Assembly: GCF_006345805.1 (NCBI RefSeq)
Contig: NC_042997.1
Span: 82,398,001-82,462,000 of the forward strand
DNA: 64,000 nucleotides
Direction: 5' to 3'
Origin: Octopus sinensis
Lineage: Eukaryota
The translations under genes and the position numbers were made by a program. Position 1 is the first letter of the stretch; every line of letters begins with the position of its first letter. The notes below the pieces were generated by a model, which worked only from the letters and a program-made list of their open reading frames with translations, ran no database searches and was not told where the DNA came from. Below are positions 1,384 through 47,427 of the stretch, piece by piece.

Positions 1384-1535
1384 TTACAAAAACAAGATTT
1401 CCCTGTTGCATTTTCTTTCTTCTTTATAATTATTTTCATTTTCATTCCTATTAGTTTTAACTGGTATTACTAAAGGCTTCCATGGTACTGGGTTGAAAAA
1501 AGTTGAAGGTGGACAAGCATTCTTGTTAGTGTATC
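1384..1535 (-). CDS. CCDC34: CCDC34 last coding exon (GYTNKNACPPSTFFNPVPWKPLVIPVK...LFL*)
   Basis: Polypyrimidine tract plus tttgcag acceptor; phase 1 joins exon 43365 (KLR g|ga = G); 152 nt = 2+150; FFNPVPWKP matches the conserved CCDC34 C-terminal FYNPIPWKP motif (recalled family knowledge). Confidence 0.85.
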
Positions 1536-1904
1536 CTGCAAAGAAATAGAAAAAACAAAAATGTTTCACTATTTTTGATATAAACCCAACATTAAGATAT
1601 TTCAACATTAAGTATTCAAACTTTGAAACTGCTTCAAGATTTCTTATTGTACACACTACAGATATGCTCAACAAGTTCTTTTGTATTTGCAATTTGCCTC
1701 TGGCCTTGAAAATCTTTTCACTCCTTATGGTTTAAAGTAAAGATGTCCTATTTCTTTTGATTAAAATAGCTAGCTGTTTTTCTTCTCCAACTAAAAGTGA
1801 AATTTCAGTTAAAAATTTATTTTTGCTTTCTGCACTTAGTACATGACCCATCTGACTCATTCAAATTCATGTCAATGACCCATTTAAGTGATTTTCCTTC
1901 ATTC

Positions 1905-1938
<34 letters not shown>

Positions 1939-2099
1939 CCAGTATGGAAAATGAATGTTAAATGATGATGATGATAGGTTAGCCAAAATGTCTATTCAGT
2001 TTTGTGTTGATACTAAACTCTAATAAGTCAGTTTGTCTCTTGTGCATGCACACTTGTTAGATACTGGACACTTCATTGTACTTCAATACAGCAAAAGAG

Positions 2100-2470
2100 A
2101 TGACTCCGAAAATGAAGAATCAAACAGACATTATCAACATCTTGTGCTTTTTTAGTGAAAGAAAGGCAAGAAAACAGCAGAAACCTGTATGAAGAAGATG
2201 CTATTATTGGATGTGTATGCCATTTAGGAAATATTTAGTTTAAGATGTACCTTGCTCTAGCCAACTAACTGAAATTAATAGCTACAAAATGAAGGAGTTA
2301 GGTGACACCAACCCCGTTATATAACCAAGATGATCACAGAAATTCTTTTAATATCCAGATCCAGAATTGAAAACCATCTGCTTCAACTTGGTTACATCAA
2401 CAGGCTCAATATTTGAGTTCCACAGCAATTGAATAAGGCTAACCTCAACTGATGTATTTCAATCTGCAAT
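2100..2470 (+). mobile_element. Degenerate mariner transposase fragment
   Basis: Broken frames give mariner-like pieces (HYQHLVLF..RKGKK; EILNISRSRIENHLLQLGYINRLNI*VP); multiple stops and frameshifts. Confidence 0.6.
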
Positions 2471-2654
2471 TCATTGCTGAAACGTGAAGAAAACAAGCCT
2501 TTTTTGATGACAGAGGAATAAAAAATAGACAGTCTATAACAACATAAAGTGCTGACCCACTAAGTAACAGGGGCATAAACATAATCAGAGGAACGTTGGT
2601 TGTCAAGTGGTGGTGGGGAACAAATATACACAAACATATCCAATGAGCATTTTT

Positions 2655-2790
2655 TTAGTTTCCATCTACTAAATTCACGTGCAAGGTATTGGTTGGCCCA
2701 GGGCTATAGTAGAAGACACTTGCCCAAGGTACCATGCAGTGGGGCTGAATCCATGATCGCAAAGCAAGCTACTTAATCAAGCAGCTATTC
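2655..2790 (-). mobile_element. tRNA-derived SINE family A, 5' fragment
   Basis: Homologous to the full copy at 54893-55293 (ggcccagggctatagtagaagacacttgcccaagg...cagtggg). Confidence 0.7.
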
Positions 2791-5777
2791 CTGTGTTTAC
2801 GTGTGTATTGTGTTGGTAATACTACAGAAATATTAATGTGGTGGCAGAACCAGGCAGTATGTTGTATCCTTGTTCAAGGCACATAATTTCACATAACTCA
2901 AATTTCAGGTCAGGTCAGATGTGGGCTCATGTGCTGTTATACATGGTTAGAATATAGCTTTTTGCCACACAACTACAGTTGAGTCTGATATCCTAATTTC
3001 GAACCTTATCTCCATTGTATTGTTTCTATTCCTGTTCTGTTACTTTTAAGAGCTATGACCCCGAAATATTGATGAATTGAAATAAATATAACTTTGAACA
3101 TAGCCAAAATGCTGAGAAACAATGCCAACTATTGTTGGATTTGAACAAAGGACACTTTCTATTACATTACATAATAAAAACAATGCTTGGATTATCTAGA
3201 AAAGGATATCATCTTACCAATCAACACAAAGCTAACATTGGCAATGATTTGATTACTAAATATTATTAAAGTGTTGATAAACTTCTTATTACAATACACA
3301 ATGATAAAAATTATCAGCAACTAGAAGTTATTTGCACTTAATGAGTCTATTTCTGAACCCAAACATTATACACTTTAACAGTAGTCTTCAGTTATTATTT
3401 TCTTTCTATTTACTACTTGTACATTTGACTTAACTTTTGTAGATTTTTTTCTTTCTTTTCAAAATATGCTCCAACAACAATATAGCAATACTTCAGGTAT
3501 CAGTAAACCTGCATGCTTTGACTTTGTCACATTATCTGAATCCTTGTCTATACATTTCCTTCCACTACTGTCACACTCCATCTTTTATTCACCTTCACCA
3601 GCATCACATACAAATGGAAAAGGGGTAATTAGAATGGTGATCTCCACCCCTTAGCAGTTTGGTCAACTTTGAGATGCCTCATCTCAAAAGGGTGCTTGTA
3701 GCTGGTCTCTTATTATCTCTTTTTGAAATTTGAACCCATTTAACTAACTTGAAGCAGACATTGAACTGGGATGTGAAGTAGCCATGAACTTCAAGAAAAC
3801 ATTCTTAAGTAGTTAGAGTATTTCACAAGCTCAATTTCAAAAACACCTTTGATTCAATCATCAGATGTGACATCATCCTCAACTGAGTGAAAGAGAGGGC
3901 TCTAGAGTTCTTCTGCTTTGCTTGGCAAACTTATTGGGAACACTCTCATCTCTCCTCTGATGACCAGTACATTTTTTTCCATTTTGTGAGTTCAGCAAGT
4001 GACTCATTAATCTTGCTCCAGTTGAAATGGACATAGATGACATCACTAGATGGGTGTCTGACTTGGATCTGAGTGTCTAGTAATTTGGTGATGCTTGTTT
4101 AGAGTGAAGTTGTTGACAGAGGAACTTGTTTAATGGTTCAAAATCTGAACTTTGAATTCTTAGCTGATCATCTTCGAAACTATGGTTTCCTTCTCTATCA
4201 GTATGGTTCTTTTTCAGTTCAATTTCTGATCTTCCTTTCAAACTACTTTTTTTCCTCTAAGACCTTGAAGCTTAAAGAATTCTTCAAAACATCAATGAAA
4301 TTGAAACCCATCGAAGTTTTTGTATATTTATAGATTATTCATCAATCACTATGTTAGTATGCTTTCTTAGGGCTAGTCCTTCATTTAGGCTCTCGCCATC
4401 CCTACAATTTTTTTATGATCTAATTTGTGAGAAATATAAAAGTTTGGTGGCTGTTAAACTCACTTCAGTTAGCCTGATCCAAACTATTCAGTGTCAGGGC
4501 TGACATAAATACTTCTACCTGCTTCATTTTTTTTTCTGTTCATGCTTCCTCCTACTCAGTGGGCAACATCCTTGCATTTTAAATATGGAAATGAATGACA
4601 ATAACAGAGGAAGGGGCTGCTGGGATTGTTAGTTCCAGACCAGGATAAACTGACTCAGAGAGCTTGAGGAAATTTACAATTGAAATATAAACTCAACTCT
4701 CATTTTGATCAATCTCATCAATATTCAAGGCCTTGCTTAATTTTGCAAGTGTTAAATTTCCTGGAAATTGGGTTGACACTTTAAGCCATAACAGCATTAT
4801 AGGCCACCCAATGCACTAGGGAGTGGGCCTACATACACAACCACAACCTACACAAAATAACATGCATTTTTTGGCCAATTACCTAGTGTGCACATTCCTT
4901 AATACAGTCTGTGAACAAAGAGAAATAATACATGGAGACCTGAAATTGGATAGTTCAAGGGGAGTTGATGTTTTTGAATGATATATACCAACAAGTTTTA
5001 ATGACTTGAAATTAACCTTTAAGTTGGAGATGAAAAACAAGCTTAGTATCGATTATTAATGAGGGAAATAATTGCAAAAAATTATGGATTAATTCTACAG
5101 AAAATTGTATTTCTATGCTTAGTGGGGAAACCTCTGTTAGTAAAGTGATTGCTATGGACATGTTTCGGTTTTACTAGACTTCAGACTATCACTTTCCGGG
5201 TTTGCGTGATCTATAAGATATTAAGTTACCATTTGTAGGTAACTGAAACCCTTTCCAAATTTACGCACCAGCTTGAGAGTTTATGTATGTGGTCGACCAA
5301 CCTACTACAAAACACAGGCACATCTGCCTCAAATCAAACCACATCCACTTCTAAAAGGGAAAGATAAATTAGTTAATGTGATCTTATTGGAATACATTTG
5401 ATTATTGGCTAACCTGAGGTTTAACAAAAACCCAATCATTAAACTATCCAAATAATTTACGGAAGTTATCTCCCTTATGAGGTTGCTTAGCAACTGCAAT
5501 TCATCAACTTGTACAGAGAATAACAACGTTACAAAACTCACGCTTTTCACAAGAGAAAATTTAGCACTACATTGCGTAAGTTTATTGTGTATTTTCGTTT
5601 AAGAATTTCAAAATACGACACACATGTAAGGGGCAAAAGAAAATTAAGTCTACATGATGAATATAAACGATAGCAAAATAGAAAGTCTATTTGGATTGTT
5701 GTTTAGTTCTTAAGTCAGCCTAGAACCTGGAGACCTTCGAAAGTTTTGTCGTCTACACACACACACACACACACACA

Positions 5778-5827
<50 letters not shown>

Positions 5828-6450
5828 ACACACACATATACGTATTGTGTGTGGGACTGCATGTCAGCTCATTTTCTATTTGTGGGACGATGGGTTGTCA
5901 TTTGAGGAAGACTTGCATGTTATATCTATTACATCAAGCGACCACATGTGACTTCCTTCATTGCTATTTTAACTCAAATTTTTGTTAAAAATCACTTTAC
6001 GCACGTTGTGATAACCAGAGCTGAGATTATACTTCGGTAGGGTGTTTGAGCATACTCTGATGAAACAACGATTCATCCATAGCCTTTCCATTAGTTTCTC
6101 AGTCTAACGATAAATCGCTCGATGAGCTAGAAATAGCAGCCACTATATTATACTGTAACATTCTTCGTTTTAGAACTGGGGGAGGAGGCACAGTGAGGAG
6201 TTTTTACTGCATTTTTGACTTTGAGAAAAAAATATTTTTTACAAATGTTCACTGTCTGTTTTACAAATGACCTTCCTTAAATGCAGTGAAAAAAATTATA
6301 ACATATTCAGAACACTATTTTAGAAAATTATTATCGTTCTCTTGGAGCATATAAAAGACAAATTTGGCTGGGGCAAAATGAGTAAGATAAGGTAAATCTG
6401 CCTCTTTAATTCTCCAGAATTACCTTTGAAAGTAGATTCATTCACATCAA

Positions 6451-6716
6451 CGATCTATTCAATATGACGGCCAGGTTTTTTAATTAATTTTTAAAACTAA
6501 ACACTTTGAAACTTCGGATACTAGTAGAATGCGTCATGTAGAACAGAGTTTACTCTTAACGTTTTTGACAAAATTTTGTTTTTATAAGTTATTTCGTGTT
6601 AAAGTTATCGTATTTGAGTAATTTTAACCAATCAATGACATGTATTCAGCTAAAGAAAATTACTGCTGCTGTTTGCGAACATTGAGAATACGATGATATA
6701 TATTATATATATATTA

Positions 6717-6747
<31 letters not shown>

Positions 6748-7829
6748 TACACACATTAATTATAGGCAGAAGTTATAGACTGACAATGGCCAAATTCGTG
6801 TTTGATAAGTGCCAATGATAGATATATACATATATGCCGATAATTTATATACATACATATATGTGTAAAAAAATCTCATCACGCAATCGAACCAATGAAA
6901 GATCCTCTACTTGGTCGTTCGACACGCTAAAAATAGCATCCAAAGTAACCTCCTACATAAATCACACGCCCATTGTACGTAATGTCCTAGATTATAAGAC
7001 GGTTTGCTGAAGGGTGGAATGTCTTTGATGATAGGTTTTGCTGTATCAGGGTTGATTTGAGGCTAAATGACAACAAAATTATGGTATATTAACACCCGCA
7101 CGATTTTCACTAAGAAAAAATACTTGGATTTTTTGCGTGGAATCAAGTACCCTGACCTCCTAATATGCTGCAAATCCCTTATTTTGGTTCGGAAAAAAAG
7201 GGTGGGATTGGGTGGGGGACCGCCGCCCCCTTTCATCCCGGAATCATTGGAAATTATTTTATTTTTTATTGAATGAATTCCTGTGACCTCCTAATATGCT
7301 ACAAAACCCTTTTTGGGGTCCGAAAAACGGGGTAGGGTGAGGTGGAATCCTCGTAAATTTCACCCCCACCCTCATTGATCTTTTTATCTGCACGATTTTC
7401 ACTAAGGACCATAATTTTGTTGTTATTTAGCCTCAAATCAATCCTGATACAGCAAAGCTATCATCAAAGACATTCTAGCCTGTCTTTTTAAGGATAATCT
7501 AGGACATTACATACAATGTGCATGTAGGTAGGGGGATACTTTGGCTGCTATTTTTAGCATGTCGAGCGACCAGGTAGAGGCTGTTTCATTGGTTCAATTG
7601 CAAGATGAAATTATTTTTACTCATATATGTATATATATATCATCAGCATATATGTATATATATATATATCATTGGCACTTATCAAACACAAATTTGGCCA
7701 TTGTCAGTCTATAACTTCTGCCTATTGTGTACACATTCTACCAGTATCCGAAGTTTCAAAGTGTTTAGTTAAAAAAAATTAATTAAAACATCCAGCCGTC
7801 ATATTGAATAGATATCTATTCTTAAACAT
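6451..7829. repeat. Large imperfect inverted repeat (arms ~6762-7085 / 7410-7725 plus outer 6451-6532 / 7733-7829)
   Basis: Reverse-complement matches read directly, e.g. gacggccagg..aaacactttgaaacttcggatact vs agtatccgaagtttcaaagtgttt..ccgtc; ggcagaagttatagactgacaatggcc vs ggccattgtcagtctataacttctgcc. Confidence 0.85.
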
Positions 7830-8474
7830 CAGAAAGATCAGAAATGCAATAAAACTTCAAAATATTTAGGTCAAATGAAAGAGAATCATGGGAAAATGGC
7901 ACAGGATATGAAAGTAACAAAACTTGACTAAATCAAAAAGCTCAACATAAAATATTCTCTATAGCGATCTGATTGCCAAATATTCCCACTACACAGCTAT
8001 GAGCATCTCACTTTTTTGTAGGCATATAGTTACAGTTTAGTCTCCCCACTTTTTTTTTATACTGCATATTTTTGCATGTACATAGGAACTGACTAACTTA
8101 TTTTCCATTTGAACATTTTCTTTTTTTGGAGTTTAAACTCTAGGATATAACTTTTAAAATTAGTTTGTAAAGTAAATAAAGCATAAAAAAACAGTTTGCC
8201 GTTTTTATGTAAATAATTGTCATAGGTTGAACAAACAAAGTTAAAATATTTTGTTTACAGTTCCCATTTTTCCATTAATTTTTTAACTGGCAATCCTTTT
8301 GTACTGGTAGACAACATCATTCACTCATATAACTTTCCTTTATGACATAGATAAAGAGGCTTGGCTGAAAAAGATGAATGACCTTGCCCCCTCATACTGA
8401 CACTTTATACCAATAAAGAAGGATTGCCTTTTAACTTTGTCTTGGTGCACCCCATATGTTACAGTCTGAAATCA

Positions 8475-8930
8475 TCATCATCATCTTCATAATGTAACAT
8501 CCGTTTTTCAAGCTGGCATGGGTTGGATGGTTTGACTGAAAACTAGTAAGCTGGAGAGCTGCACAGGTTCCAATCTTACTTGGCATGGTTTCTATGGCTG
8601 GATGTCCTTCCTAACACCAACCACTCCAAGAGTGTAGAGGGTGCTTTTTATGTACCACCAGCACAGGTGCCAGTTACGTACACCAGCATCAGCTACAACT
8701 ATGCTCTCACTTGGCTAGACAGGTTTCCTCAAGCAAGGTATATTGCCAAAGGTTTCTGTCTCTTGTCACTGCCTCTGTGAGGCCCAACATTCAAAGAGTG
8801 CTTTTTACATGCCACCAGCATGGATGCCAGTTATGCAACACTGGCAACAGCCATGACTATGATTTCACTTGGCTTGATGGGTTTTCTCAAGCATGGCATA
8901 TCGCCCACACCCCAAAAGTCCAGTTTATTT
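8475..8930 (-). mobile_element. RTE-clade LINE 3' UTR fragment with (GAT)n tail
   Basis: Matches 3' UTR of copies at 13448-14250 and 19333-20702; catcatcat tail at ~8475. Confidence 0.75.
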
Positions 8931-9479
8931 TGGTTCTTTGTGCCAAGAAATTTAAATCTAATGTAACTTCAGCTTTCTAGCTGTGACCCTAACTCTAATC
9001 CTGAACTCTTATCTCTAAACTTAAAACCAAACCTGACCATAAACTCTAACTACAAAACACTAATCTTTAAACCCAACCAAGACTCAAAATAATATAAGCA
9101 TACATATTATAAACTGTACTAAATTTTATTATGCATGAATCAGACTTTACCTTTTGTTTAGAAAATTTTATACTTCAGACTGTAAACTAAGGGATACACC
9201 TTTCTTGTGACAGTTGAAGACAATCACTAAATCAATACATTTCCCCCATTCCCTCAACATATGCAATATACACAATTGAGGAAGAAACAGTAGAAGTAGT
9301 GAGAGGTAACAATAACCCTTTCTTGAAATATCATACAAAAAGTACCAGAAGAATTTCACTAAATGTCATTGCAAACTGGATATAAGTAGAAAATTTCTTT
9401 TCTTAAGAATCTATCCTTATTAACAAGAGTGCCTAACCCTAGAGGCATGGCTTATTGTCTGATTTGAGCATACATTTTA

Positions 9480-9690
9480 GGATCATCAAACTGTCCTAAT
9501 ATAGGACCAAGGCCTGAAATGGGGTGGGGGTAGACAATTATACTGATCCCCAGTACTTGACTAGTACTTATTTCATTGACCCCAAAAAGATGAATAGCAA
9601 ACACAACCTTGGTAGAATTTGAACATAATGACGGCTGAAATGCAGTTAAGCATTTTGTCTGATGCGTTAACAATTCTACCAGCTTGCCAC
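9480..9690 (-). mobile_element. SINE family B copy
   Basis: Shared core ccccagtacttgactagtacttatttcattgaccccaaaagatgaa..caaa..gaccttgg..gaatttgaac, also at 11760-11970, 27500-27905, 51720-51990, 58770-59000, 61548-61760. Confidence 0.75.
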
Positions 9691-10184
9691 TTTACTATAT
9701 TTATTCATAATGACAAACCAAACTTAATTTAAGGTTTCGTCCTCACATAACTTTTTAATTTCAATTCAATAATTGGCTACAAATCCTATACTGAATGTAG
9801 AAGAACATTGGTGCTGAGCATTTCACCAATGGTAGGCCATTGGCCAGCACACACCTCTATAAAGCATACAATAATAAATAATAATTTCAGGAAGATAGTT
9901 TTCAAAAGGATTATAAATCATATAGAAAGTAAAGCTTTATTTTAAAACTAAAAGTACTATTTCTTTTTGGGGGATGAGGGCCAAAAAGAGGTGTAATGGA
10001 TTGAATGAACTCTACTATGTTACTGTTATGGATTTTATTGAGCTTAGGAAAAAAAAAAGATGAAGTTGAACTTGAAGGTATTTGAACTGAAAACTTGGAA
10101 GGACAAGATTAAGTATTGTAATATTTGAGTGTCTATTTACTGAGTTAACCATACATGTTTTCGAATAGAGCAAAGCTAATATAT

Positions 10185-11660: not shown

Positions 11661-11759
11661 ACTAGAATAAAAAAATTGTTTCTGTGAGAGAAAAATAACT
11701 GGTATCTATTTTACTAACACTGTTGACCATATTGAGATCATGCTCAGAAATATTAATTT

Positions 11760-11970
11760 CAAATTTTGGTACAAGGCCAGCAAGTTTGGGGTTAGGGTGT
11801 AAGTTGATTTCATTGACCCCAGTGCTCAACTGGTACTTACTTTTTCAACTCCAAAAGGATGAAAGGCAAAGTTGACTTTGGTGGAATTTACTCAGAACAT
11901 AGAGATGGACAAAATGATGCTAAGCATTCTGCATGGCATGCTAACAACCCAGCCAGCTCACTGCCTCATG
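11760..11970 (-). mobile_element. SINE family B copy
   Basis: Same core as 9480-9690 and 61548-61760. Confidence 0.75.
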
Positions 11971-12334
11971 CTCAGAAAATATTGAAACATAAAGATTTAT
12001 AAATAAAGCAATTCTGATACAAGTAAGCAAGAATCATCATCATTGTCATCAATCATACAGTCTACCTTATATCTGGCAGTGAATAATGAGTGACCCAAAC
12101 ACTTTAAAATATTTCTATTTCTTACAATAATAAACTATACAAAAACATAGAACCTATTTACAGCTATATGGATTAAGGCAACAAAGGTTACATCTTGGAC
12201 TTAACAAGGTTTTGGTTGTGTGTTAGATCAGACTTACCATTATTAATCTATAAAACAGTGGGTGTGTGTCAGAGAGAAAAAGATAAGCAAATTATAAAAG
12301 TGAGTATTCTCTTTTTAGCCTCAGAGACCATTAC

Positions 12335-12526
12335 ATGATGTTAGACACGAAGGTAGACATAGTCCTTCCAGAAGGATGTATAGACAGCAAATACATCATT
12401 GATAATCTTGGTGTTCCATTGACGAAAGCATTAACGGAAATTATACTGAAACAACCTTTGGACCCTATTGAATACTTAGCCAGATGGCTCTACAAGTACA
12501 AGGAAAACCAATCAGAACTTCAAAAG
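12335..12526 (+). CDS. Dpy-30 domain (DYDC-like)/ankyrin protein, coding exon 1
   Basis: YIIDNLGVPLTKALTEIILKQPLDPIEYLARWLYKY is a Dpy-30 dimerisation motif; acceptor ctctttttag at 12318 upstream of ATG; donor aag|gtaagc; 192 nt, phase 0. Confidence 0.88.
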
Positions 12527-12650: not shown

Positions 12651-12701
<51 letters not shown>

Positions 12702-36441: not shown

Positions 36442-36534
36442 GTTCATCGCACACCAATACATTACAGTTTTGGGATATCAGAAAGCTTAATGAATCTTTT
36501 CCCTCAAGATGACTCAGATTTTGAAGTTGATGCG
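36442..36534 (+). CDS. Dpy-30/ankyrin protein, coding exon 7 (VHRTPIHYSFGISESLMNLFPQDDSDFEVDA)
   Basis: ttttttttag acceptor, gcg|gtaagt donor, 93 nt; KDN+VHRTPIHY completes an ankyrin repeat across the intron. Confidence 0.88.
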
Positions 36535-38104: not shown

Positions 38105-38153
<49 letters not shown>

Positions 38154-38157
38154 TTTA

Positions 38158-38217
<60 letters not shown>

Positions 38218-38218
38218 T

Positions 38219-39835
38219 CCATTTCTCTTCTCAGAGCTCTCAATATCACATTCTCCAGTTAATTCTGTAAGAACAGACAACAACCAGACCAGTAGTCAGT
38301 AGTCTCACAGGGTCTCTTTTCACAATACTCAACACCCAAATACAAATCTCAAGATTCTCAGTGTCCTCAATAAAGCAGTTTTCTGAGCATGTTCTACTTT
38401 CATGTCAATCCCAATTTCTCCAACAAATTTTTCAAACCTAGTAGTTAATGCTCCCAATGTCCCTGCAGCTACTGGGATGACACTTATTCTCTTCATTGCC
38501 CACATTCATACAATTTCATCTTTTAGTGCCTTGTATTTCTCAATCTTTTCCAGCTCTTTGTCACCCACTCACACATTGTCAGGTATGGCAGAATCTGTGA
38601 TCCTGGTTTCCTTCATCCCTTAATCCTCTACAACAATGTCTGGTCTCCAAGCATCAATCGCTGAATCATACTGAATTGTAAAATCCCATAAGATCTTCTG
38701 CTTGTTTTTCTCAGTGATGCCTTCTGGTTTATGCTTGTATCATTTCAATGTCCTTTCAAGACTTCTCACACAGTCTCCAGTGAGCAAACTTCACCATGTT
38801 ATCATGCCTCCGTTTGTATTCCTTTTGGACCAGTTTGCTAACTCACTCATGACATGTGAAATTGTTTTGTTTTTACTGCTATACATCCTACAAAAGGGTG
38901 ATTCACTACTCTTATCCATTTGGAACTTAGTGTAATTAGTTCTCAAAGCTTGTTCATGGGTACTGCATATCAATGCCTCAGTGCATCTTTTCAGACCACT
39001 ATTTCTTAGCCATCTCCAGATGTTGGTCTTGTCTTTCCCTTCAATTTCTCTGAGGTATTTCCTATGCATCATTTTCATTTTCCAGCTCTTCAATCTTTGT
39101 TCTCCATCTTGTTTCTTAAATTCTTTTGGGTAAGTTGCATTTTCACTCAGTGTCATGTTGCTCTTTCTAATAGCAACAAACAAAGGTTTGATATACCATC
39201 CCAGACTGTTTTCCTCATTGACAACACAGACCTAGAATCTAATAAGACCTCTTCCTCCCTTGTATCTAGGTAAACACAGTCTATCAGTATCGCTTTTAAG
39301 TTGCAGTTCCTTGTTCACTGTCATCACTTTCCAGGTTTTTCTATCCATTCTCTCAAGCTCAATCTTTGTCCACCTAACAACACCTGTGCTGTATCGCATC
39401 ACGGAGACAACCCATGTATTCATTGCCCTGATCTTGTTCTTTCCCTTGAGTTTACTTTCTATAATTAATTTGGGTATTCTGAGGTATTCTCGCCTAAAAC
39501 TTTCCTTCATCTCATTATCTCATTCTCCTTGATTTTGTCATACTCCAAAATACCCAGATACTTATATCCATCCACCTCAACACCATCAAATGACACTACT
39601 TTGCCTATTTTTATGATAAGCATGCCACACTTTATAATCCCAAATTTCATCCCAATATCTTTACTGAATATCTGCTGTGTTGAGACCAGACCATTTATTT
39701 CATGTTCGATCTTACCAAAAATTTTAAAGGCATCCATATAGAACAGATAATTTAACTTTTTCCAAGGTGTATCCTGATGTCACTTTCTATATTTGTGTGA
39801 GGGGTATCATACAAATCACAAACACGACAACAACA
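38219..39835 (-). mobile_element. R4/Dong-type RLE LINE, 5'-truncated, inserted in (TAA)n
   Basis: RT end (YMDA), CRMY Zn-knuckle region and KILWDFTIQYDSAIDAWRPDIVV RLE motif; flanked by (TAA)n at 38105-38218 and ~39836-39922. Confidence 0.88.
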
Positions 39836-39838
39836 ACA

Positions 39839-39923
<85 letters not shown>

Positions 39924-40092
39924 TTTTAGTCGTAGATGTAGTTTTCTCTACTTTGTTCGTTTCAATAGATCAGAGAATAAAGACAGTTCTTTAAGCCAGA
40001 ATATGAAGAAGACATTGTAAGTGAGAGGAGTCAACAATCTCAACAAATTACTTATTATGCAATAATATTTTTTCAATCTTATTTTTCAACAG

Positions 40093-40230
40093 TTGAACAA
40101 AGCACCAAAAGATTACTTAGAAGACCCAACAGATATCCTTGCTTTAAGGAAAGAAGATATGATTGCTCCTGATAATGTAGTAGAGAACTTAAATGCAGAG
40201 TTTGATGATGCAAAAAATGACAGTGACTGA
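40093..40230 (+). CDS. Dpy-30/ankyrin protein, last coding exon (LNKAPKDYL...KNDSD*)
   Basis: tttttcaacag acceptor, 138 nt phase 0, TGA stop. Confidence 0.82.
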   Translation: MNKAPKDYLEDPTDILALRKEDMIAPDNVVENLNAEFDDAKNDSD

Positions 40231-40273
40231 AGAATGTAGTTAACGGTTACTCATTAATATGAATGACTAAACA

Positions 40274-40279
40274 AATAAA
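40274..40279 (+). terminator. Candidate polyadenylation signal AATAAA of the nested gene
   Basis: 44 nt after the stop codon. Confidence 0.5.
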
Positions 40280-40386
40280 ATCATTCCAATGAAACATAAA
40301 TTATTTTATTAATTATTCTACTGGGTGATTCAAAAGTCTCTTTGTCATTACAACTAACATTAGTTCAGGTCACTTGAGCTTCATAT

Positions 40387-41054
40387 CCCTTTAGCATTTA
40401 AACTGGACATATCCAACCTAAATATTCTACCTGTTCTATATTCAAACCAGCTAAAACCAGACTCTCATACTTACCCTACAATGTCATTCTAAAAATGAAA
40501 AATCACATCATCAAAACCTTAAGGCTACAAGATAATACATGATTAATTCAAAACAATGTGAATAAATAAGTATTACCTTTGACCAAGTAATCTGAATGCT
40601 ATAGTTAATGTACATCTTATTTCTCCCTCACACAGCCTCCATCAATCACCTCACTGCATTCATTAATAGCCACCTCAACTGCAGTCTCCTCCACCAATGA
40701 CTGCCACAGCTTAGAGATTCCAGGATAGCTGGTCTACTGCCCTACCATCCAATACTGCCAACTGTCTGGATTGCCCCAGGCAGTTGAACTACCATTATAG
40801 TGCACCATTTTTGGACAATGAATATTCTCTCATCTATAACCCTTTAACATTTGAGCTATCAAGCTCAAACATTCTACCTGGTTTTATGTTTGAACTGGCC
40901 AGATTCAGCCTTTCACGCTTACTTTACAATATCATTCTAAAAATAAACAGTCACATCATTAAAATCTTGAAACAACAAGATCGTGCATGATCAATTTGAA
41001 ACAATATGTATCAGTAAGTATTACATTTTATAGAGTAATCTGAATGCTAAAGGG
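40387..41054. mobile_element. Two piggyBac-type MITE copies (40387-40604, 40840-41054); third at 44100-44318
   Basis: TIR ccctttagcatt / gaatgctaaaggg, about 215 bp; TTAA on both sides of the 44100 copy. Confidence 0.7.
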
Positions 41055-41829
41055 CTAAATAACATTTTCTAGAATATATAAACGAGATAAATAAGTCAAA
41101 ATATATTCACAACAAAAAAGCAAGAATACTGTTAAAATGCAGAAAAAGATTGTAGCAAAGTAAAAAATTTTTTAAATCGTGTCATTTAAATGCGAAAAGG
41201 ACTTCTGAATGACTCTGTATAATAACTAAAAATAACATGAAATTGTGAGATATTTTGTAAACTTAAGAATAGTACACTAAACTGATAAATTATTTGGTAT
41301 AGTTTTGCAACAGGAAAAAAAAAAATGTGTGTGTCTGTGTGTGTATAGCTGTCTGTGAATACTACATAAATCCTGAAGCAATTCATAAAAATTTATTATT
41401 TCAATGTTTTTAACCAGTTTCCATTTACACATACATGCACAAATCTCTTTCTTTCCGTCTTTCTCCCTTCTAAACACTATTTTTATTCACTAGCAAAAGT
41501 TTTAAAAGAGACAGTTTATTTCTTGGAGTTAAATGCCACTCCCAATGCCTATAATTTCTTTATTTTGTGTACATTAAAACAAGAAAAGTCATGTGCGTTG
41601 ATCTTTTATTATACAAATAAAATTTCAGACCTTTGATGAGTATACTTACTGAAATATTTCTTGGGTAGCAATTATTGTGATTTGTTTTGGTAAATATTAC
41701 AATAATGTTAAAGAGAAACAATAATTAAAAATAATAACCCAAAAAAACAAAATGAATAAAAAGCAAATAAAAATTATTGTGCTATATCCCAAATTTATCA
41801 AGTGCACATTGTTAATAACATGAGAAACA

Positions 41830-42630
41830 AACTTCTGCTTTGAGTACATAGACAGAAGATTTCCAGCTCTGAGCATGGAGAAGCTGAAGGCAAGTATATT
41901 TGACAGGCTACAGATCAGAGAACTCATGAAAGGCCCACATTTCCAAGATTCAATTTAGAATACTAAGGTAGATGCATGGTCTTCATTCACTTTGTAAGAA
42001 ATTTTCTTGGAAGCTATAAAGCAGATAACTACTTTGAACAAGTAGAGAACATGCTCTCTTCTTTCTATTGACTTGGCTGGATAGTAGGAGCATCAAAGTG
42101 CATTACCTCCACAACCACTTGGATTATTTCCCAGACAACCTTGGTGATCGAAGCGATGAACAAGGTAAATGATTCTACCAAGATTTAACAATTATGGAAG
42201 AAAAATGTCATGGACACCGGGAAACCCATGTGATGGTAGACTACTTCTGGACCTTTCAACATGATTGCTCTGGGGCAGCTCCCCACAGGAAGTTTCTGAG
42301 ATGCTACTTCTGTGAGATGTCTGAGTAAATGAACATGGTATCACTGGTAACTTTCTATGCTTGTTTTCATCCATTCTATGGATGTAATTTAATCATAAAC
42401 ATATTCTTTATATGAAGCCACTTTTTTTTTTATCCAAAAGGTGACAGTAAAGATTTGTAGTTATCAATCCTTGTGTCCAATTGGTTGTTTGTATTGCAAT
42501 TAGTGGGTATAATATATCTTGATAACCAGAGCTGATGAAGAAAAACTGATGGTACATTTAGAATCAGCAACCAAAATTTACCTAAAAACAAGTTGAATAT
42601 ATCAGGTGCCAAATTCTGTGTTCTCCTGCA
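41830..42630 (+). mobile_element. Fossil DNA transposase, Chapaev3/CMC-like
   Basis: Manual translation CFEYIDRRFPALSMEKLKASIFDRLQIRELM and FPDNLGDRSDEQGK*FYQDL..VMVDYFWT; superfamily name from recalled motifs (GIFDGPQIR, SDEQGERFHQD). Confidence 0.65.
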
Positions 42631-42889
42631 ATACTGACTTTTATGTTTTTATATTCAAACCAATATTTTACAATTCCTACATTTTCTGCAGATCATTGAC
42701 AACCTCTGTAAGTGAACTACTCAGTGTGTGTATGTGTGTTTGCGTGTGTGTGTGTGTGTGTGTGTATGTGTTTGTGTTTGTGTGTGTGTGCGTGCATGTG
42801 TGTGCGTGCATGTGTGTGCATTGGCATGGAATAAACAAAAATTAGTTCTGAGTTGTTCTTTTTAAGATCGACCTGTCTTTCACCCCATG

Positions 42890-43275
42890 TAAGATCAATC
42901 AAATAAGTACCAAACGATGTACTGGGTATGATATAATCAACTAAAACCTTTAAAAGCAGTGCCCCAGCATTGTCATAAGTCCATTAATTGAAATCATTTT
43001 ATTGTTGTTTGTTTCAGTCATTGGACTGTGGCTACGCTGGGGTACTGCTTTGAATGGTTTAGCTGAACAAATCCCCTGGCCCTGTACTTTTGGAGTCTGA
43101 TACTTATTCTATCAGTCTCTTGCTGAACTGCTAAGTTACAAGGATGTACAAAAACAACCACCAGCTGTTAAGCAGTAATGAGAGTGGGGGACAAACACAA
43201 ACACACACACACACACCTGTATCTGAGGCCATGTGGTTGCAAAACAAGCTTCTTAATCACTCAGCTATACCTGCA
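42890..43275 (-). mobile_element. tRNA-derived SINE family A, degenerate
   Basis: Shares gtttcagtcattggactgtggc..tacttattctatcagtctcttgc with 54893-55293. Confidence 0.7.
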
Positions 43276-43364
43276 CCTAACTGGTAAAAACAAATGATAA
43301 TAAAAAGACTACTAATCACAAGAATTTAATATTACAATTTAATACTGGTATAATTTAAACTCAC

Positions 43365-43915
43365 CTCTAAGTTTGCTTGTTTTATTATTAAGTCTGTTTT
43401 GTGACACATTATTACCAGACTTATTTATTTTTTCACACCATTCTTTATACGTTTCTCTAGCTTTCTCTTGACGTAGTTTGTGTAATGATTCTTCTTCTTT
43501 CTTCTTTTGGGTTTCAATCTTTTTTTTAGTTTTCTCAAGCATTTTCTTCTTATCAAGCCACTGTTTAAAGTTAACTTCAGACTTTTCAGCAATTTCTTGT
43601 TTTCTGACAGCTTCCTGTTTCTTCTTTTCAATATATTCTCGTCTTTCTTGACAAATGTGCAATCTTTCTGCTTTAGCTTTCTCTTCAAGCCACTTATACC
43701 GAGAAAGGTTAATTTGGATTTTTTTTTCTTCCAAAGCTTGTGCCTCTCTGATTTTGGCAATTTTCTTCATTTTCTTTTGTTCTTCTTGTTTGATAGTGAT
43801 GTCTCGTTCTTCTTTTATTTTCATAAGTAACCACTTTTCCCAAGGTGTCAGGGGACGTGGTAATTTTTCATTGCTTGATGAGGGACAAACTGATTGACTT
43901 CCACTTGGGACAAAA
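43365..43915 (-). CDS. CCDC34: CCDC34 coding exon 2 (coiled-coil; LTPWEKWLLMKIKEERD...KWL..FKQWL..YKEWCEK)
   Basis: tttgacag acceptor at 43916, g|gtgagt donor at 43364; 551 nt = 1+549+1; LTPWExW and periodic W-containing helices typical of CCDC34. Confidence 0.9.
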
Positions 43916-44854
43916 CTGTCAAAGAATAATTAAAGAAATAAACATAATCAAGTTTAGTGCATAATATTTTTTAATATCTATAATATCATTACAAACTGAT
44001 TTTGCTTCCTTTCTCTGAGCAATACTTCATTTTCAGTCCAGTATATATATTAGCATGGAATATTGAAGTAAGTTGTTTTACATCGTTATATTTTCTTAAC
44101 CCTTTAGCATTCAAACTGACAATATCTGACCAAAATATTCTGCCTGTTTTATACTGAAACTGGCCAGAGCTGGCCTTTCACCTCAACCCTACAATGTTAT
44201 TCTAAAACTATGTAAACACATCATCAAAATCTCAAAGCTATGAGATAATTCATGATTAATTCAAAGCAAAAAAAATAAACAAACACACATTTGACAGAAT
44301 AATCTGAATGCTAAATAGTTAATGCTGACTAAATTACGGTATGAGTACCATAGTTGTCAAACTATGGTGCACGTGTTTTTGTTTATGTTTGTGAAGAAGG
44401 TCATCACTTTCTGTAAAATTTTTATTATTCTTTTTATATATGTGAGGTATGGGGGAAGGGTATCTTTTCAAGTCGGCGTAAAAGCAAAAGAGACAGAGAG
44501 AATGCAATTGGATCGGGAAGGTTCTTTTGAAGTTGGTGGGCCATCTGTGTGTGTGTGTGTTTGTGTGTGTTTGTGTGTATGTGTGTGTGTCACTGAAGCC
44601 ATACATACATACATAACAACCTGCATGTGTGTCACTAAAGCCATTCATACATACATATATAACCTCTCTCTCTCTTTCACTTTTTCTCTGTCAATCACTC
44701 ACACATTCACTCACTACAAAAAGTGAATTTAAAAATTTCAGTTATCTCTCTCTCACATACACACACAGCAGCAACATTACTCTGTCTGTCTCTTCACACA
44801 CACTAACAACAGCACTTCACATACACGCCACACTTTCTGTCTCGCACACCCCAT

Positions 44855-44927
<73 letters not shown>

Positions 44928-45889
44928 GTGTGTGCATGCGCACATCAATTCTTCCGATTCACGCCAATTTCAAAAGGACTTCCCTCATACAATCGCACTT
45001 TCTCTGTCTCTTTCACTTTCACACTGACTTCAAAAGATCCCCGTTCCCCCAAACCTATATGTAAAAAAATAATTTTTTTTTACGGAAACCTACGATCATC
45101 TTCACAAATGTAGATAAACACACATAGTTTATAAGTGACAGTTATGTGACCAGTATCGTAAGATCGCCATCGCCATTAATGCTAAATAACTTCAGTGGGA
45201 ACTGAGATCTGTTTTACATTTTACTGAGCAGCAAGGGAATGATGTTCTTATCTAACAACTAAAATGAAAATCCTTATTCTTTGTTTGTTTGTTTTTTTTC
45301 CTATTTTCCGGTGGTAAAAAAGGGAAGATAAAATAAATATGAAACTACTGAAGCTATAAAATATGTAATTGTTATTAAGTATCCTATGCTCAAAAAAGAT
45401 AAATAGAACTAATTACTCAGTCATTTTGAACCCTGTAATATTTTTTTGTACTGCCTTCAGGAAAAGAGCACATAGTTTCTAACAGGTATTAACAACATAA
45501 GAGAAATGAAATAGCTAAAATCTAGAATAAAACCTGTGTAACTGACTCAGTACATTGATAGTTTATTTCCTGCTTTAGCTAAGAAAAGCAACAGATCTCT
45601 AAAATCTACAATAGTCTATGTCATTATAGCCATAACACTCAAATTATTCTGTCAAATGTAAATCACATTGTTTTGATGATGTGACTACTTTTAGAATGAC
45701 ATTTTTGGGTAGATATGAGAGGCTGCATGTGGGTGGTTTGTACATAGAGCAAGTAGAATACTTAGATTGGATATGGTCAGTTTAAATACTAAAGAGATAA
45801 ATTATTGGAAATTATTCCTTGAATTAGTAAAGTTGTTGATTTCAACTATAGAATGTACAGATTCAATGTTGGTTAACAGGAGAATATTT

Positions 45890-46175
45890 TTTTCATTGCT
45901 GGTGCCATGTAAAAAGCATCCAGTCCACACTGTAAAGTGGTTGGCACTTGGAAGGGCACCCAGTTGTAAAAACCATGCCAAAACTGATCTCACTTGTGCT
46001 CGTGCCACGTAAAATGCACTGTCCGCTCTGCGGAGTGGTTGGTGTTAGGAAGGGCATCCAGTCATAAAAACCATGCCAAAACACATAATAGCCTGGAGTA
46101 GTCTTCTACCAGGCTGGCTCTTGACAAACCGTCCAACCCATGCCAACATGGAAGGCAGATGTTGATGATGATGAC
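45890..46175 (+). mobile_element. RTE LINE 3' UTR fragment with (GAT)n tail
   Basis: gtggttggtgttaggaagggcatccag...ccgtccaacccatgccaacatggaa..gatgatgatg. Confidence 0.75.
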
Positions 46176-47065
46176 CATGATCATGATGAAGTTAGCATGT
46201 ATGTACATGCATACACACATGCACAAATTTTTAATCTTACCACACACTAACATCTGTCAACTGAGTTTTATTGAGCCATGTCTTTACAACATTTTAAAAA
46301 ACAAATAATATACACTGGGAAAGAAATAAAACTCTATCCATTAGTTGGACATGGAAAAATTTGTGCTTCTTTTTGTATCTACCCTATTTTGTTTAGTTCC
46401 CACATATTGTTTCATGAAAAACTACAATATTTCATCTCCAAATAGTAATTTTCCCCATGATAGCTGTAAGTAATAAAGTTGTCATATCATTAAAAATAGT
46501 CCACAGAATCAATGTTCCTAGCAATGTTGTTTAATTTCCTAATACAAAGTGTGATTTTTTTTTTCTGATAGAATATGAAAATACAGAAAATAAAAGGTGT
46601 CAGTCATCTCAACAGTATAACAAATGTTTCTTTTTCAATACAACTCCTATCTCTGTCTCTCTCATTTACTCTCCATGAATAGTACATATACTCTACAACT
46701 GAAACATTTTCCTTGGCTACTTACCCTCCAGTACAAATAGAACAAACCAACTGAATAGTTACCTCTATTGCAACAAAGCAAATTGATTTTTTTGAACAGA
46801 TGTTACATGAAATGATATGGTTATGAAATTTTTTGAAGTGAAAAAGTCAAAAAATTACTGTTGTGATTAGATTACTAAATTCTACTTAGCTTAAAACTCC
46901 TTAGAGTTAACAAACATTTGAGATATATTTGACCATATTCATTGCTGTTTACTGTTGTGAATAAAACCTCTATACTGATCAAATATGTTTGACACACATT
47001 TGGTCTGTTTACTCACAACACTGTTTTCACACACCTACTACAACATATTTAGAGAAAGCTCATAC

Positions 47066-47427
47066 CTGGATCTCTCTTCATCAACATTTGAAATACAAAT
47101 ATCATGGAAATCTTTCGATATATCTTCAATGAAAGAGTTTCTACTTTCTTCTTTTTCTTTCAACAACTCAGAGAACATTTGGTTTTCTCTCTGATTTCTA
47201 GGTTGCAACAACTCATGACTAAAACATACTGTGTTTTCTCTTCTATTGTGAAAGTTCTTCTCTGATATTTGGCCATCTTCAGATTCATAGCTGTCATGAT
47301 CCAATATTGATAGTAAAGAAGCTGTTGAGCCAATTGAATCTAGAGAATTGTTCCTTTCTCTTACATATTGTAATTTCATCCAATCTGGCTTGGTAACAGT
47401 AGTTGTTACAGGCTGAGGGCGTGCCAT
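47066..47427 (-). CDS. CCDC34: CCDC34 coding exon 1 (MARPQPV...SIGSTASLLSILDHDSYE...EERS)
   Basis: Acceptor ctctttcag just upstream of ATG (so an unlocated 5' UTR exon exists); donor ag|gtatga; 362 nt phase 2 joins exon 2; STASLLS resembles CCDC34 STRSLLS. Confidence 0.8.

What the first reader, a model, noticed from the sequence alone, without database searches (positions are those of the whole stretch)
1384..47427. A complete 8-exon gene nested antisense inside the 41.8 kb last intron of CCDC34
Seen: CCDC34 exon 2 ends KLR g|GTGAGT (43365), and the phase-compatible exon that completes the family C-terminus (G-YTNKNACPPSTFFNPVPWKP) lies at 1535-1384. The whole Dpy-30/ankyrin gene (12335-40230) is therefore inside that intron on the opposite strand. 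Established: vertebrate CCDC34 and DYDC-type Dpy-30 proteins are both linked to cilia/sperm flagella. Inference: a nested, possibly co-regulated flagellar gene pair with ~28 kb of sense-antisense pre-mRNA overlap.
Basis: partly seen in the sequence, partly recalled or inferred. Interest (0 to 1): 0.72.

Follow-up and report, generated by a model that had tools for sequence, protein, structure and literature searches.

The report
Octopus CCDC34 hosts antisense Dpy-30/ankyrin gene
The last intron of the octopus sperm-tail gene CCDC34 contains a whole second cilia-type gene on the other strand; public annotation already shows this ordinary layout, but the same nesting is also present in a scallop and an abalone, so it is very old.

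Summary
The window is Octopus sinensis CM016859.1.

- **Host gene:** on the minus strand, three GT-AG coding exons (47427-47066, 43915-43365, 1535-1384) splice to a 354-aa protein with the same sequence as RefSeq CCDC34 isoform X1.
- **Nested gene:** the 41,829-nt last intron holds, on the plus strand, eight GT-AG exons (12335-40230). They translate exactly to RefSeq LOC115218250 (389 aa): a Dpy-30 motif, a coiled coil and ankyrin repeats. Its closest solved relatives are the radial-spoke proteins DYDC1, DYDC2 and RSP2.
- **Already annotated:** both gene models and the nesting are in the public annotation, so the finding as stated is not new.
- **What I add:** the same gene sits on the opposite strand in the same phase-1 intron in O. 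bimaculoides, Argonauta, the scallop Ylistrum and the abalone Haliotis. A cuttlefish locus is compatible, and a horseshoe-crab locus hints at it. A shark CCDC34 has the same intron without a guest.
- **Open:** co-regulation is untested. RefSeq also lists a 305-aa CCDC34 isoform that skips the far exon.

It is a new, anciently conserved member of a common kind, the antiparallel host/nested gene pair.

The parts
47066..47427 (-). CCDC34 coding exon 1 (362 nt; ATG at 47427). A good acceptor (ttccctctctttcag) lies 8 nt upstream of the ATG, so a non-coding 5' exon further upstream is likely.
   Evidence: the 5' exon is inferred from the sequence
43365..43915 (-). CCDC34 coding exon 2 (551 nt). It holds most of the PF13904 domain and ends KLR + G|GTGAGT, in phase 1.
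1536..43364 (-). Last intron of CCDC34 (41,829 nt, phase 1, splitting a Gly codon). The same position and phase are seen in shark, scallop, abalone and horseshoe crab. It contains the whole guest CDS plus LINE fragments, a tandem array and microsatellites.
1384..1535 (-). CCDC34 terminal coding exon: (G)YTNKNACPPSTFFNPVPWKP...ILFL*, with the stop ending at 1384. It is the only copy of the family's C-terminal motif in the window.
12335..12526 (+). Guest gene (LOC115218250) coding exon 1: start codon and Dpy-30 motif (residues 18-56).
21195..21289 (+). Guest coding exon 2 (coiled coil).
25576..25739 (+). Guest coding exon 3 (coiled coil; start of the first ankyrin-like repeat).
28072..28191 (+). 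Guest coding exon 4 (120 nt; the same length in scallop and abalone).
29253..29416 (+). Guest coding exon 5.
30546..30749 (+). Guest coding exon 6 (core of the Ank_2 match, residues 252-322).
36442..36534 (+). Guest coding exon 7.
40093..40230 (+). Guest coding exon 8 with stop TGA at 40228-40230. An AATAAA at 40274 lies 43 nt downstream, so the 3' UTR is probably short and ends about 3 kb before CCDC34 exon 2.
   Evidence: conservation with Argonauta stops at 40301
40475..40490 (-). Best candidate (unproven) for the alternative terminal exon of the 305-aa isoform X2 (...KLRE*): tttttcatttttag|AATGA, with its first exon base at 40488. It lies inside a SINE-like repeat, and the acceptor and stop are kept in O. 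bimaculoides. Other conserved candidates start at 40317 and 43108.
   Evidence: location inferred, no transcript data
33443..35657 (-). LINE-type retrotransposon fragment (endonuclease and reverse-transcriptase ORFs) inside guest intron 6. It is part of the repeat load that inflates the host intron.

Best explanation
This is a genuine antiparallel host/nested gene pair in Octopus sinensis, and it is already in the public annotation.

**Shown:**
- CCDC34 needs a small far exon (1535-1384) to complete its conserved C-terminus.
- The phase-1 intron before that exon is ancient; a shark has it at the same codon.
- In molluscs that intron contains, on the opposite strand, the entire coding sequence of a 389-aa protein. 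Its N-terminal half resembles the radial-spoke proteins DYDC1/2 and RSP2 (Dpy-30 motif plus coiled coil). Its C-terminal half is ankyrin repeats.
- The arrangement predates the split of cephalopods, bivalves and gastropods.
- In O. sinensis the intron contains LINE fragments, a tandem array and microsatellites.

**Inferred:**
- Repeat insertions account for much of the growth of the intron to 41.8 kb; I did not measure what fraction of it is repeat.
- Full-length CCDC34 is made only when RNA polymerase reads about 42 kb through the guest gene in antisense and the 43365-to-1535 splice is made.
- Transcripts that instead splice to a nearer exon and end early give the annotated 305-aa isoform without the conserved tail.
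- The pair has stayed together mainly because the guest cannot be moved out without two breaks inside one intron of a needed gene.
- Both genes are probably active in cells that build motile axonemes (spermatids, ciliated epithelia). There the guest protein would dock through its Dpy-30 domain in the radial-spoke head-neck region.
For: **Gene models.**
- Exact exon maps with GT-AG sites: both spliced products carry the RefSeq protein sequences.
- Pfam PF13904 covers the full model including the far exon.
- The motif occurs once in the window.
- The public annotation lists the same two CDS spans on opposite strands, and the window is 100% identical to that record.

**Same nesting elsewhere, verified by my own spliced mapping or tblastn.**
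- O. bimaculoides: last intron 32,559 nt; guest 38331-17076.
- Argonauta hians: last intron 22,157 nt; guest 29094-20625.
- Scallop Ylistrum balloti: host exons at 21757-21272 and 6878-6798; guest 10001-16424.
- Abalone Haliotis asinina: host exons at 36671-36519, 31294-30674 and 2137-2048; guest 10001-28691.
- The guest keeps its exon structure across these species. Exon lengths 120, 161-164, 201-204 and 93-96 nt recur.

**Age of the intron.** Shark CCDC34 has the same intron position and phase, 5.2 kb long, with no Dpy-30 sequence in the locus.

**Guest identity.** Dpy-30 E 4e-11 and Ank_2 at 32.7 bits against a cut-off of 27.3. Best solved relatives are DYDC1, DYDC2 and RSP2.

**Literature.**
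- CCDC34 variants cause sperm-flagellum defects.
- DYDC1 is a head and head-neck component of radial spoke 1.
- Host/nested pairs are common, are often co-expressed in testis, and can drive premature polyadenylation of the host.

**Short isoform.** Isoform X2 (305 aa) is listed for both Octopus species.
Against: - I saw no transcript evidence. The 43365-to-1535 junction rests on RefSeq models, on conservation of the exon and on the lack of any alternative. It does not rest on reads I examined.
- UTR extents are unknown, so strict nesting of the transcripts is not shown. A good acceptor 16 nt before the guest ATG allows an upstream 5' exon.
- Expression of either gene in octopus tissues was not available.
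- A scan for RFX X-box motifs found nothing near either gene start.
- No conserved non-coding blocks are shared with Argonauta. There is therefore no positive sign of shared regulation.
- The guest has ankyrin repeats that DYDC1/2 lack, so a place in the radial spoke is inferred from homology of the N-terminal half only.
- The structure model was too poor to help (mean pLDDT 61.7).
Confidence: 0.85

Rival explanations
1. The nesting is kept by selection for regulatory coupling. Antisense transcription of the guest (or a shared chromatin domain) sets when and in which isoform CCDC34 is made, so the two axoneme-related genes act as one conserved regulatory unit.
For: - The arrangement, the orientation and the host intron are the same in three mollusc classes, and there is a hint in Limulus.
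- Across Metazoa overlapping pairs are rarely conserved. The few deep cases are all nested antiparallel.
- Both genes belong to cilia/flagella families.
- A truncated host isoform exists in two species. Its best candidate exons lie just before the guest's 3' end, as in the mammalian cases of premature host polyadenylation upstream of a nested gene.
Against: - No expression data were available.
- No X-box motifs and no conserved non-coding elements were found.
- Physical entanglement alone predicts long persistence.
- The tick and plant-bug loci hold the guest family with no detectable CCDC34 piece, and vertebrates keep CCDC34 without a guest. Neither gene therefore needs the other in cis.
Confidence: 0.3
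2. The far exon is rarely or never used in octopus. The working CCDC34 transcript would be the short form ending near 40.3-43.1 kb, and the two genes would in practice be tail-to-tail neighbours rather than host and guest.
For: - RefSeq lists the 305-aa isoform X2 in O. sinensis and O. bimaculoides.
- The Sepia pharaonis annotation stops its CCDC34 model (247 aa) right after exon 2.
- Conserved acceptor-plus-stop candidates exist between exon 2 and the guest's stop codon.
Against: - The far exon encodes the most conserved part of the family's C-terminus. It is kept from shark to octopus, scallop, abalone and Limulus, with an intact acceptor and the same phase.
- It is needed for a full PF13904 match.
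- Human frameshift variants in the C-terminal third of the protein (p.N244Kfs*3 and p.F267Kfs72, in a 373-aa protein) are reported in infertile men. This suggests, without proving, that the tail matters.
- An unused exon would not stay intact for this long.
Confidence: 0.07
3. The arrangement is an artefact: an assembly misjoin between 1.5 kb and 43 kb, or a chimeric gene model that borrows an exon from another gene.
For: None found. The intron is repeat-rich, which in principle invites misassembly.
Against: - The order and orientation are the same in five independent assemblies from three mollusc classes.
- The exon is the family's own C-terminus, not part of another gene.
Confidence: 0.02

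Closest known systems
Synapsin/TIMP nested pair (TIMP in an intron of synapsin, opposite strand, from cnidarians and Drosophila to human)
   Same: - A protein-coding guest lies wholly inside one intron of a protein-coding host on the opposite strand.
- The location of the nested gene relative to the host protein is kept over hundreds of millions of years.
- The guest is lost from the host in some lineages.
   Different: - The genes are different, and here both partners belong to cilia/flagella families, unlike synapsin and TIMP.
- Conservation is shown here only within Mollusca, with a hint in a chelicerate, and it is absent from a shark. It is not shown metazoan-wide.
Mammalian host/nested gene pairs with host isoform effects (catalogue of Montibus et al. 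2024, which cites Wood et al. 2008 and Cowley et al. 2012 for two imprinted loci)
   Same: - The guest sits in a long intron.
- The host has an alternative short isoform that ends before or at the guest.
- The genes are of the testis-linked kind that are often co-expressed.
   Different: - No expression or polyadenylation data exist here, and the short isoform's exon is only a candidate.
- Mammalian nested genes tend to be less conserved than their hosts, which those authors read as more recent origin. This guest is as old as its host's intron.
DYDC1 / DYDC2 / Chlamydomonas RSP2 (Dpy-30-domain proteins of the radial-spoke head-neck)
   Same: - Guest residues 17-157 align with almost the whole of DYDC1 (residues 2-144 of 175; E 2.4e-13).
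- DYDC2 and RSP2 follow in the hit list. DPY30 itself does not appear at E up to 1, and NME5 only at E 0.17-0.9.
- The model predicts a Dpy-30 helix pair followed by a long helix (low confidence).
   Different: - The guest is 389 aa and carries a C-terminal ankyrin-repeat half that DYDC1/2 lack.
- In other protostomes the module is the tail of much longer ankyrin proteins. In insects these also have a phosphagen-kinase domain.
Vertebrate CCDC34 (human: 6 exons, 373 aa, testis-dominant; variants cause oligoasthenoteratozoospermia and flagellar defects)
   Same: The PF13904 domain, the conserved LxPWEKWL and GY...NPxPW motifs, and the position and phase of the last intron.
   Different: - Octopus has only 3 coding exons, against 7 in the shark.
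- Its last intron is 41.8 kb and holds a guest gene, against 5.2 kb and no guest in the shark.

Membership tests
CCDC34 (Pfam PF13904) | A match to the family model above the curated cut-off, over the full model | tested here: met
   89.6 bits against a cut-off of 35, E 2.5e-25. Residues 143-323 cover model positions 2-169 of 169.
CCDC34 (Pfam PF13904) | The conserved C-terminal motif GY...P...NPxPW, encoded by a separate last exon after a phase-1 intron in a Gly codon | tested here: met
   Invariant G305, Y306, P313, N319, P320 and W323 in alignments with Argonauta, shark, scallop and abalone. The same acceptor and phase are seen in eight loci.
CCDC34 (Pfam PF13904) | Orthology to named CCDC34 proteins | tested here: met
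   Same sequence as XP_029643872.1 and 92% identical to O. bimaculoides CCDC34. A profile search returns vertebrate CCDC34 proteins.
Antiparallel host/nested gene pair | The guest coding sequence lies wholly inside one intron of the host, on the opposite strand | tested here: met
   Guest CDS 12335-40230 (+) lies inside host intron 1536-43364 (-). The public annotation agrees.
Antiparallel host/nested gene pair | The whole guest transcript (UTRs included) lies inside the host intron | tested here: inconclusive
   The 3' side looks likely: an AATAAA lies 43 nt after the stop, and conservation ends at 40301. The 5' end is unknown, and an acceptor 16 nt before the ATG allows an upstream exon.
Antiparallel host/nested gene pair | The host transcript is really spliced across the guest | not testable with these tools
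   No read data were available. The splice is supported indirectly by RefSeq models in three Octopus species and by conservation of the far exon.
DYDC / RSP2 subfamily of Dpy-30-domain proteins | A Dpy-30 motif above the Pfam cut-off | tested here: met
   PF05186: 42.8 bits against a cut-off of 22, residues 18-56.
DYDC / RSP2 subfamily of Dpy-30-domain proteins | Closer to DYDC1/2 and RSP2 than to other Dpy-30 proteins, with similarity extending into the coiled coil | tested here: met
   DYDC1 2.4e-13 (query residues 17-157), DYDC2 3.1e-10, RSP2 7.8e-6, NME5 0.17. DPY30 is not listed at E up to 1.
DYDC / RSP2 subfamily of Dpy-30-domain proteins | The animal DYDC architecture: a short protein (about 160-180 aa) with no other domain | tested here: not met
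   The guest is 389 aa with an Ank_2 match at 252-322. It is therefore DYDC-like in its N-terminal half and is not filed as a DYDC orthologue.
DYDC / RSP2 subfamily of Dpy-30-domain proteins | Physical presence in the radial spoke | not testable with these tools
   This needs axoneme proteomics or cryo-EM from a mollusc.
Ankyrin-repeat proteins | An ankyrin-repeat model above the curated cut-off | tested here: met
   Ank_2 scores 32.7 bits against 27.3. The single-repeat models fall just below their cut-offs.

The most novel reading that the evidence does not exclude
The CCDC34 / Dpy-30-ankyrin nest may be a regulatory unit for motile-cilium genes that dates to the protostome ancestor; Limulus already has the CCDC34 terminal exon upstream of, and antisense to, its copy of the guest. 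In this reading, transcription of the radial-spoke-like guest decides whether the host reaches its far exon (full-length CCDC34) or ends early (the truncated isoform). Selection on that switch, and not mere entanglement, would have kept the two genes interlocked for more than half a billion years.
Probability: 0.12. Interest if true: 0.6.

Novelty: new member of a known kind. Interest (0 to 1): 0.3.

Why it matters
As reported, this is an ordinary gene-within-a-gene that the public annotation of three Octopus species already contains. About a sixth of human genes host another gene.

The age of the arrangement is worth recording. The same guest sits in the same host intron, in the same orientation, in cephalopods, a bivalve and a gastropod. 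A five-species comparison (human, mouse, zebrafish, fly, worm) found only three overlapping gene clusters conserved between ecdysozoans and vertebrates, all nested antiparallel, with synapsin/TIMP the classic case.

This pair is also unusual because both partners come from cilia/flagella families. That makes it a natural test of whether long-lived nests persist by entanglement or by shared regulation.

It also corrects public annotation:
- The O. bimaculoides guest is named "reticulocyte-binding protein homolog 2a".
- The Sepia models of both genes are truncated.
- The Limulus CCDC34 terminal exon is not among the genes called in the fetched locus.

Tried and rejected
- **RFX X-box scan.** Strict consensus forms gave 0 hits (0.7 expected). 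A loose form gave 16 (20.5 expected), none near either gene start. This gives no support for shared ciliary regulation.
- **Conserved non-coding elements.** O. sinensis against Argonauta shows only exons and dispersed repeats.
- **Hidden upstream ankyrin exons.** Abalone, Aplysia, Pinctada and Limulus have long N-terminal extensions, so I searched for matching exons that would carry the octopus guest beyond the host. None were found in the window or in 8.6 kb beyond it.
- **Locating the isoform X2 terminal exon.** There are 31 acceptor-plus-stop sites. The best candidates that keep the acceptor and stop in O. bimaculoides start at 40488, 40317 and 43108, between exon 2 and the guest's stop. 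None could be confirmed.
- **Third homologue search.** A CCDC34 profile, meant to reach other invertebrate phyla, returned only vertebrates and octopods.
- **Arthropod loci.** The Anopheles and one tick isoform were not on record. The tick and plant-bug loci I did fetch contain no detectable CCDC34 piece.
- **Limulus.** The upstream CCDC34 exons were not found within the fetched 68.6 kb, so nesting there remains unproven.
- **Sepia.** The terminal exon lies outside the fetched locus.
- **CCDC34 against solved structures.** No relatives.
- **AlphaFold model of the guest.** Mean pLDDT 61.7 and pTM 0.38, too poor for a fold search, so none was run.
- **tRNA and Rfam scans of the window.** Nothing.
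- **Literature.** No paper pairs CCDC34 with nested-gene or microsynteny terms, and none mentions the gene or protein accessions.

Full report
**What is in the window.** Window positions 1-57427 are 100% identical to the reverse complement of a public locus, Octopus sinensis chromosome record CM016859.1, 82389384-82455427. This is nuclear DNA of the East Asian common octopus.

**The host gene.** I read the claimed CCDC34 boundaries on the minus strand and spliced them.
- Coding exon 1 is 47427-47066 (362 nt).
- Coding exon 2 is 43915-43365 (551 nt). It ends AAA CTT AGA G followed by GTGAGT.
- The terminal coding exon is 1535-1384. It follows ttctttgcag and ends with the stop at 1384.
- The product is 354 aa. 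It has the same sequence as XP_029643872.1, CCDC34 isoform X1 of O. sinensis, and is 92% identical to the O. bimaculoides protein.
- Pfam PF13904 matches residues 143-323 over model positions 2-169 of 169 (E 2.5e-25). Exon 2 ends in codon 305, so the last 18 or so matched residues come from the far exon.
- A pattern for the family's C-terminal motif occurs once in all six frames of the window, at that exon. No nearer exon can complete the domain.
- The intron is 41,829 nt.

**The guest gene.** An exact spliced mapping of the RefSeq protein XP_029643859.1 (LOC115218250, 389 aa) gives eight plus-strand exons, all with AG acceptors and GT donors. They are 12335-12526, 21195-21289, 25576-25739, 28072-28191, 29253-29416, 30546-30749, 36442-36534 and 40093-40230. 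Their translation equals the protein residue for residue. The public annotation lists the same two CDS spans, 46,044 and 27,896 nt, on opposite strands.

**What the guest is.**
- It has a Dpy-30 motif at residues 18-56 (E 4e-11) and an Ank_2 match at 252-322 (32.7 bits against a cut-off of 27.3).
- Against all solved structures, the best matches are DYDC1 (9fqr, E 2.4e-13, query 17-157 against chain 2-144), DYDC2 (8wzb, 8j07) and Chlamydomonas RSP2 (7jrj, 9e5c). All are chains of radial-spoke structures. NME5 is marginal and DPY30 itself is absent.
The ankyrin half is extra, so I do not file the protein as a DYDC orthologue.
- A search of 1.8 billion representatives finds 1,673 matches. Among those I could name, the whole module recurs in molluscs and arthropods.
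- In several species it forms the C-terminal part of much longer ankyrin proteins: abalone 1371 aa, Aplysia 816, pearl oyster 752, horseshoe crab 2078, tick 1657. In insects the long form also carries a phosphagen-kinase domain. The scallop has a short 433-aa form like the cephalopods.
- An AlphaFold model from four cephalopod sequences was all-helical but of low confidence (mean pLDDT 61.7). I did not use it further.

**Links to cilia.**
- Human CCDC34 is reported as testis-dominant. Its variants cause oligoasthenoteratozoospermia with flagellar defects, and IFT20 is named as a potential interactor.
- DYDC1 is placed in the head and head-neck of radial spoke 1 in human and mouse sperm.
- CCDC34 itself has no solved relative.

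**Is the layout real, and how old is it?** I fetched the loci of relatives and mapped the exons myself.

| Species | CCDC34 last intron | Guest CDS (opposite strand, inside that intron) |
|---|---|---|
| O. sinensis (window) | 41,829 nt | 12335-40230, 8 exons |
| O. bimaculoides | 32,559 nt | 38331-17076, 8 exons |
| Argonauta hians | 22,157 nt | 29094-20625, 8 exons |
| Scallop Ylistrum balloti | about 14.4 kb (main exon 21757-21272, terminal exon 6878-6798) | 10001-16424, 8 exons |
| Abalone Haliotis asinina | about 28.5 kb (exons 36671-36519, 31294-30674, 2137-2048) | 10001-28691, 19 exons |
| Shark Chiloscyllium punctatum | 5,200 nt | none; no Dpy-30 sequence in the locus |

- The abalone host model (312 aa) has no Pfam hit on record in the collection, but its exons match CCDC34.
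- In every mollusc the guest's 5' end faces the host's terminal exon.
- The guest's exon structure is kept. Exons of 120, 161-164, 201-204 and 93-96 nt recur, and the last eight abalone exons correspond to the eight octopus exons.
- The host intron sits at the same place and phase in all of them, inside the Gly codon of ...KL(R/T/K)G|Y..., and also in the shark.
- The intron is therefore older than the nest, or the guest was lost from it in vertebrates.

**Partial cases.**
- In the cuttlefish Sepia pharaonis, CCDC34 exons 1-2 lie tail-to-tail 1.2 kb from the guest's 3' end, as in octopus. The fetched locus ends 7 kb upstream of the guest's first exon, and the terminal exon is not in it.
- In Limulus, an exon not among the called genes encodes GYYDGTSPPRPTYCNPHPWQ. 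It has a cag acceptor and the same phase, and lies 9.7 kb upstream of the guest homologue on the opposite strand (E 6.5e-6). The other CCDC34 exons are not within the 68.6 kb fetched. They must lie beyond the guest's far end, be too diverged to detect, or be lost.
- A tick locus and a plant-bug locus show no CCDC34 piece.
- Taken together, the nest is shown for three mollusc classes, is possible in a chelicerate, and is absent in a shark.

**How it probably works.** The shown part is the geometry.
- To make the conserved C-terminus, transcription of CCDC34 must run about 42 kb through the guest in antisense and splice 43365 to 1535.
- RefSeq also lists a 305-aa isoform X2 (...KLRE*) in both Octopus species. 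It uses another last exon.
- I could not place that exon. The best candidates that keep the acceptor and stop in O. bimaculoides start at 40488, 40317 and 43108, between exon 2 and the guest's stop. The best of them sits in a SINE-like repeat 258 nt from the guest's stop codon.
- This fits what is described for mammals, where a nested gene or an intronic LINE is associated with premature polyadenylation of the host upstream of the guest.
- The intron contains LINE endonuclease and reverse-transcriptase fragments (33443-35657 and 32243-32713), a 62-nt tandem array (19500-20209) and microsatellites. I infer that these insertions account for part of the size differences between species; I did not measure the repeat fraction.

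**Why the pair persists.** My preferred reading is physical entanglement. Separating the genes needs two breaks inside one intron of a needed gene. I rate regulatory coupling at about 0.3. I found no positive sign of it: no X-box motifs, no conserved non-coding blocks and no expression data. The guest family also occurs without a detectable CCDC34 in the tick and bug loci, and CCDC34 occurs without a guest in the shark.

**Comparison with what is known.**
- Host/nested pairs are common. About 17% of human genes host one, with little orientation bias, and co-expression is frequent in testis.
- Deep conservation is rare. A five-species study found only three overlapping clusters shared between ecdysozoans and vertebrates, all nested antiparallel, with synapsin/TIMP the classic case.
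- This pair belongs to that small class, at least at the level of Mollusca.
- I found no paper that mentions it.

**Verdict.** The case is a new, anciently conserved member of a known kind, and of modest interest.

Noticed in passing
window 10420-11640: A 1.2-kb tract rich in G, A and T and very poor in C on the plus strand. The 10-12 kb bin has GC skew +0.52 and GC 0.42. It ends about 0.7 kb upstream of the guest gene's start codon. Its nature (degenerate microsatellite, or a promoter-proximal element) is unknown.
   Followed up: partly
window 12300-12334: A strong acceptor (ttctctttttag) lies 16 nt before the guest's ATG, and a donor-like AAAAG|GTGAGT lies just before it. The guest may have a separate 5' UTR exon upstream. 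If that exon lay beyond 1384, the transcripts would be interleaved rather than nested.
   Followed up: partly
window 40488, 40936 and about 44240 (minus strand): Copies of a SINE-like repeat carry ...gatgatgtg...ttttag|AAT(G/A)A, i.e. a ready-made acceptor followed by a stop. One copy may have been exonised as the end of CCDC34 isoform X2.
   Followed up: partly
window 19500-20209; also 13949-14102 and 61990-62499: A 62-63-nt tandem array (11.5 copies, 86% matches) has related copies elsewhere in the window, and similar-looking sequence occurs in CCDC34 intron 1 (about 45.9-46.2 kb). It creates long spurious ORFs.
   Followed up: partly
window 33443-35657 (-), 32243-33031 (+), 57386-57718 (-): LINE-type retrotransposon fragments with RVT_1 and endonuclease matches. 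The largest lies in guest intron 6, in the sense orientation of CCDC34.
   Followed up: partly
L008 (Limulus polyphemus KI894285.1) 303-136, minus strand: A CCDC34 terminal exon that is not among the genes called in the fetched locus (GYYDGTSPPRPTYCNPHPWQ..., 56 codons to the stop). It lies 9.7 kb upstream of, and antisense to, the 2078-aa ankyrin/Dpy-30 gene. The rest of CCDC34 is not in the locus.
   Followed up: partly
L004 (Sepia pharaonis CAHIKZ030003900.1) 7047-7238 and 9953-10051: The public model of the cuttlefish guest (333 aa) omits its Dpy-30 first exon. Transcript-derived proteins of 412-415 aa include it. The neighbouring CCDC34 model (247 aa) stops right after exon 2.
   Followed up: partly
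P0008 (O. bimaculoides XP_014772839.1): RefSeq names the guest's orthologue 'reticulocyte-binding protein homolog 2a'. This is most likely a spurious name drawn from its E/K-rich coiled coil. The domains present are Dpy-30 and ankyrin.
   Followed up: yes
P0035, P0044; L010 1-15754: In insects the module is fused to, or lies directly after, a long ankyrin protein with a phosphagen (arginine/creatine-type) kinase domain. From my own knowledge, Dpy-30-domain nucleotide kinases are found in axonemes, so this would fit a flagellar role. That link was not tested.
   Followed up: no
L009 (Dermacentor albipictus CM090514.1) 35800-39511: The 90-kb tick homologue of the guest itself hosts a same-strand peptidase M13 gene. 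A 352-aa minus-strand gene without Pfam hits abuts its 3' end, and tblastn did not recognise that gene as CCDC34.
   Followed up: partly
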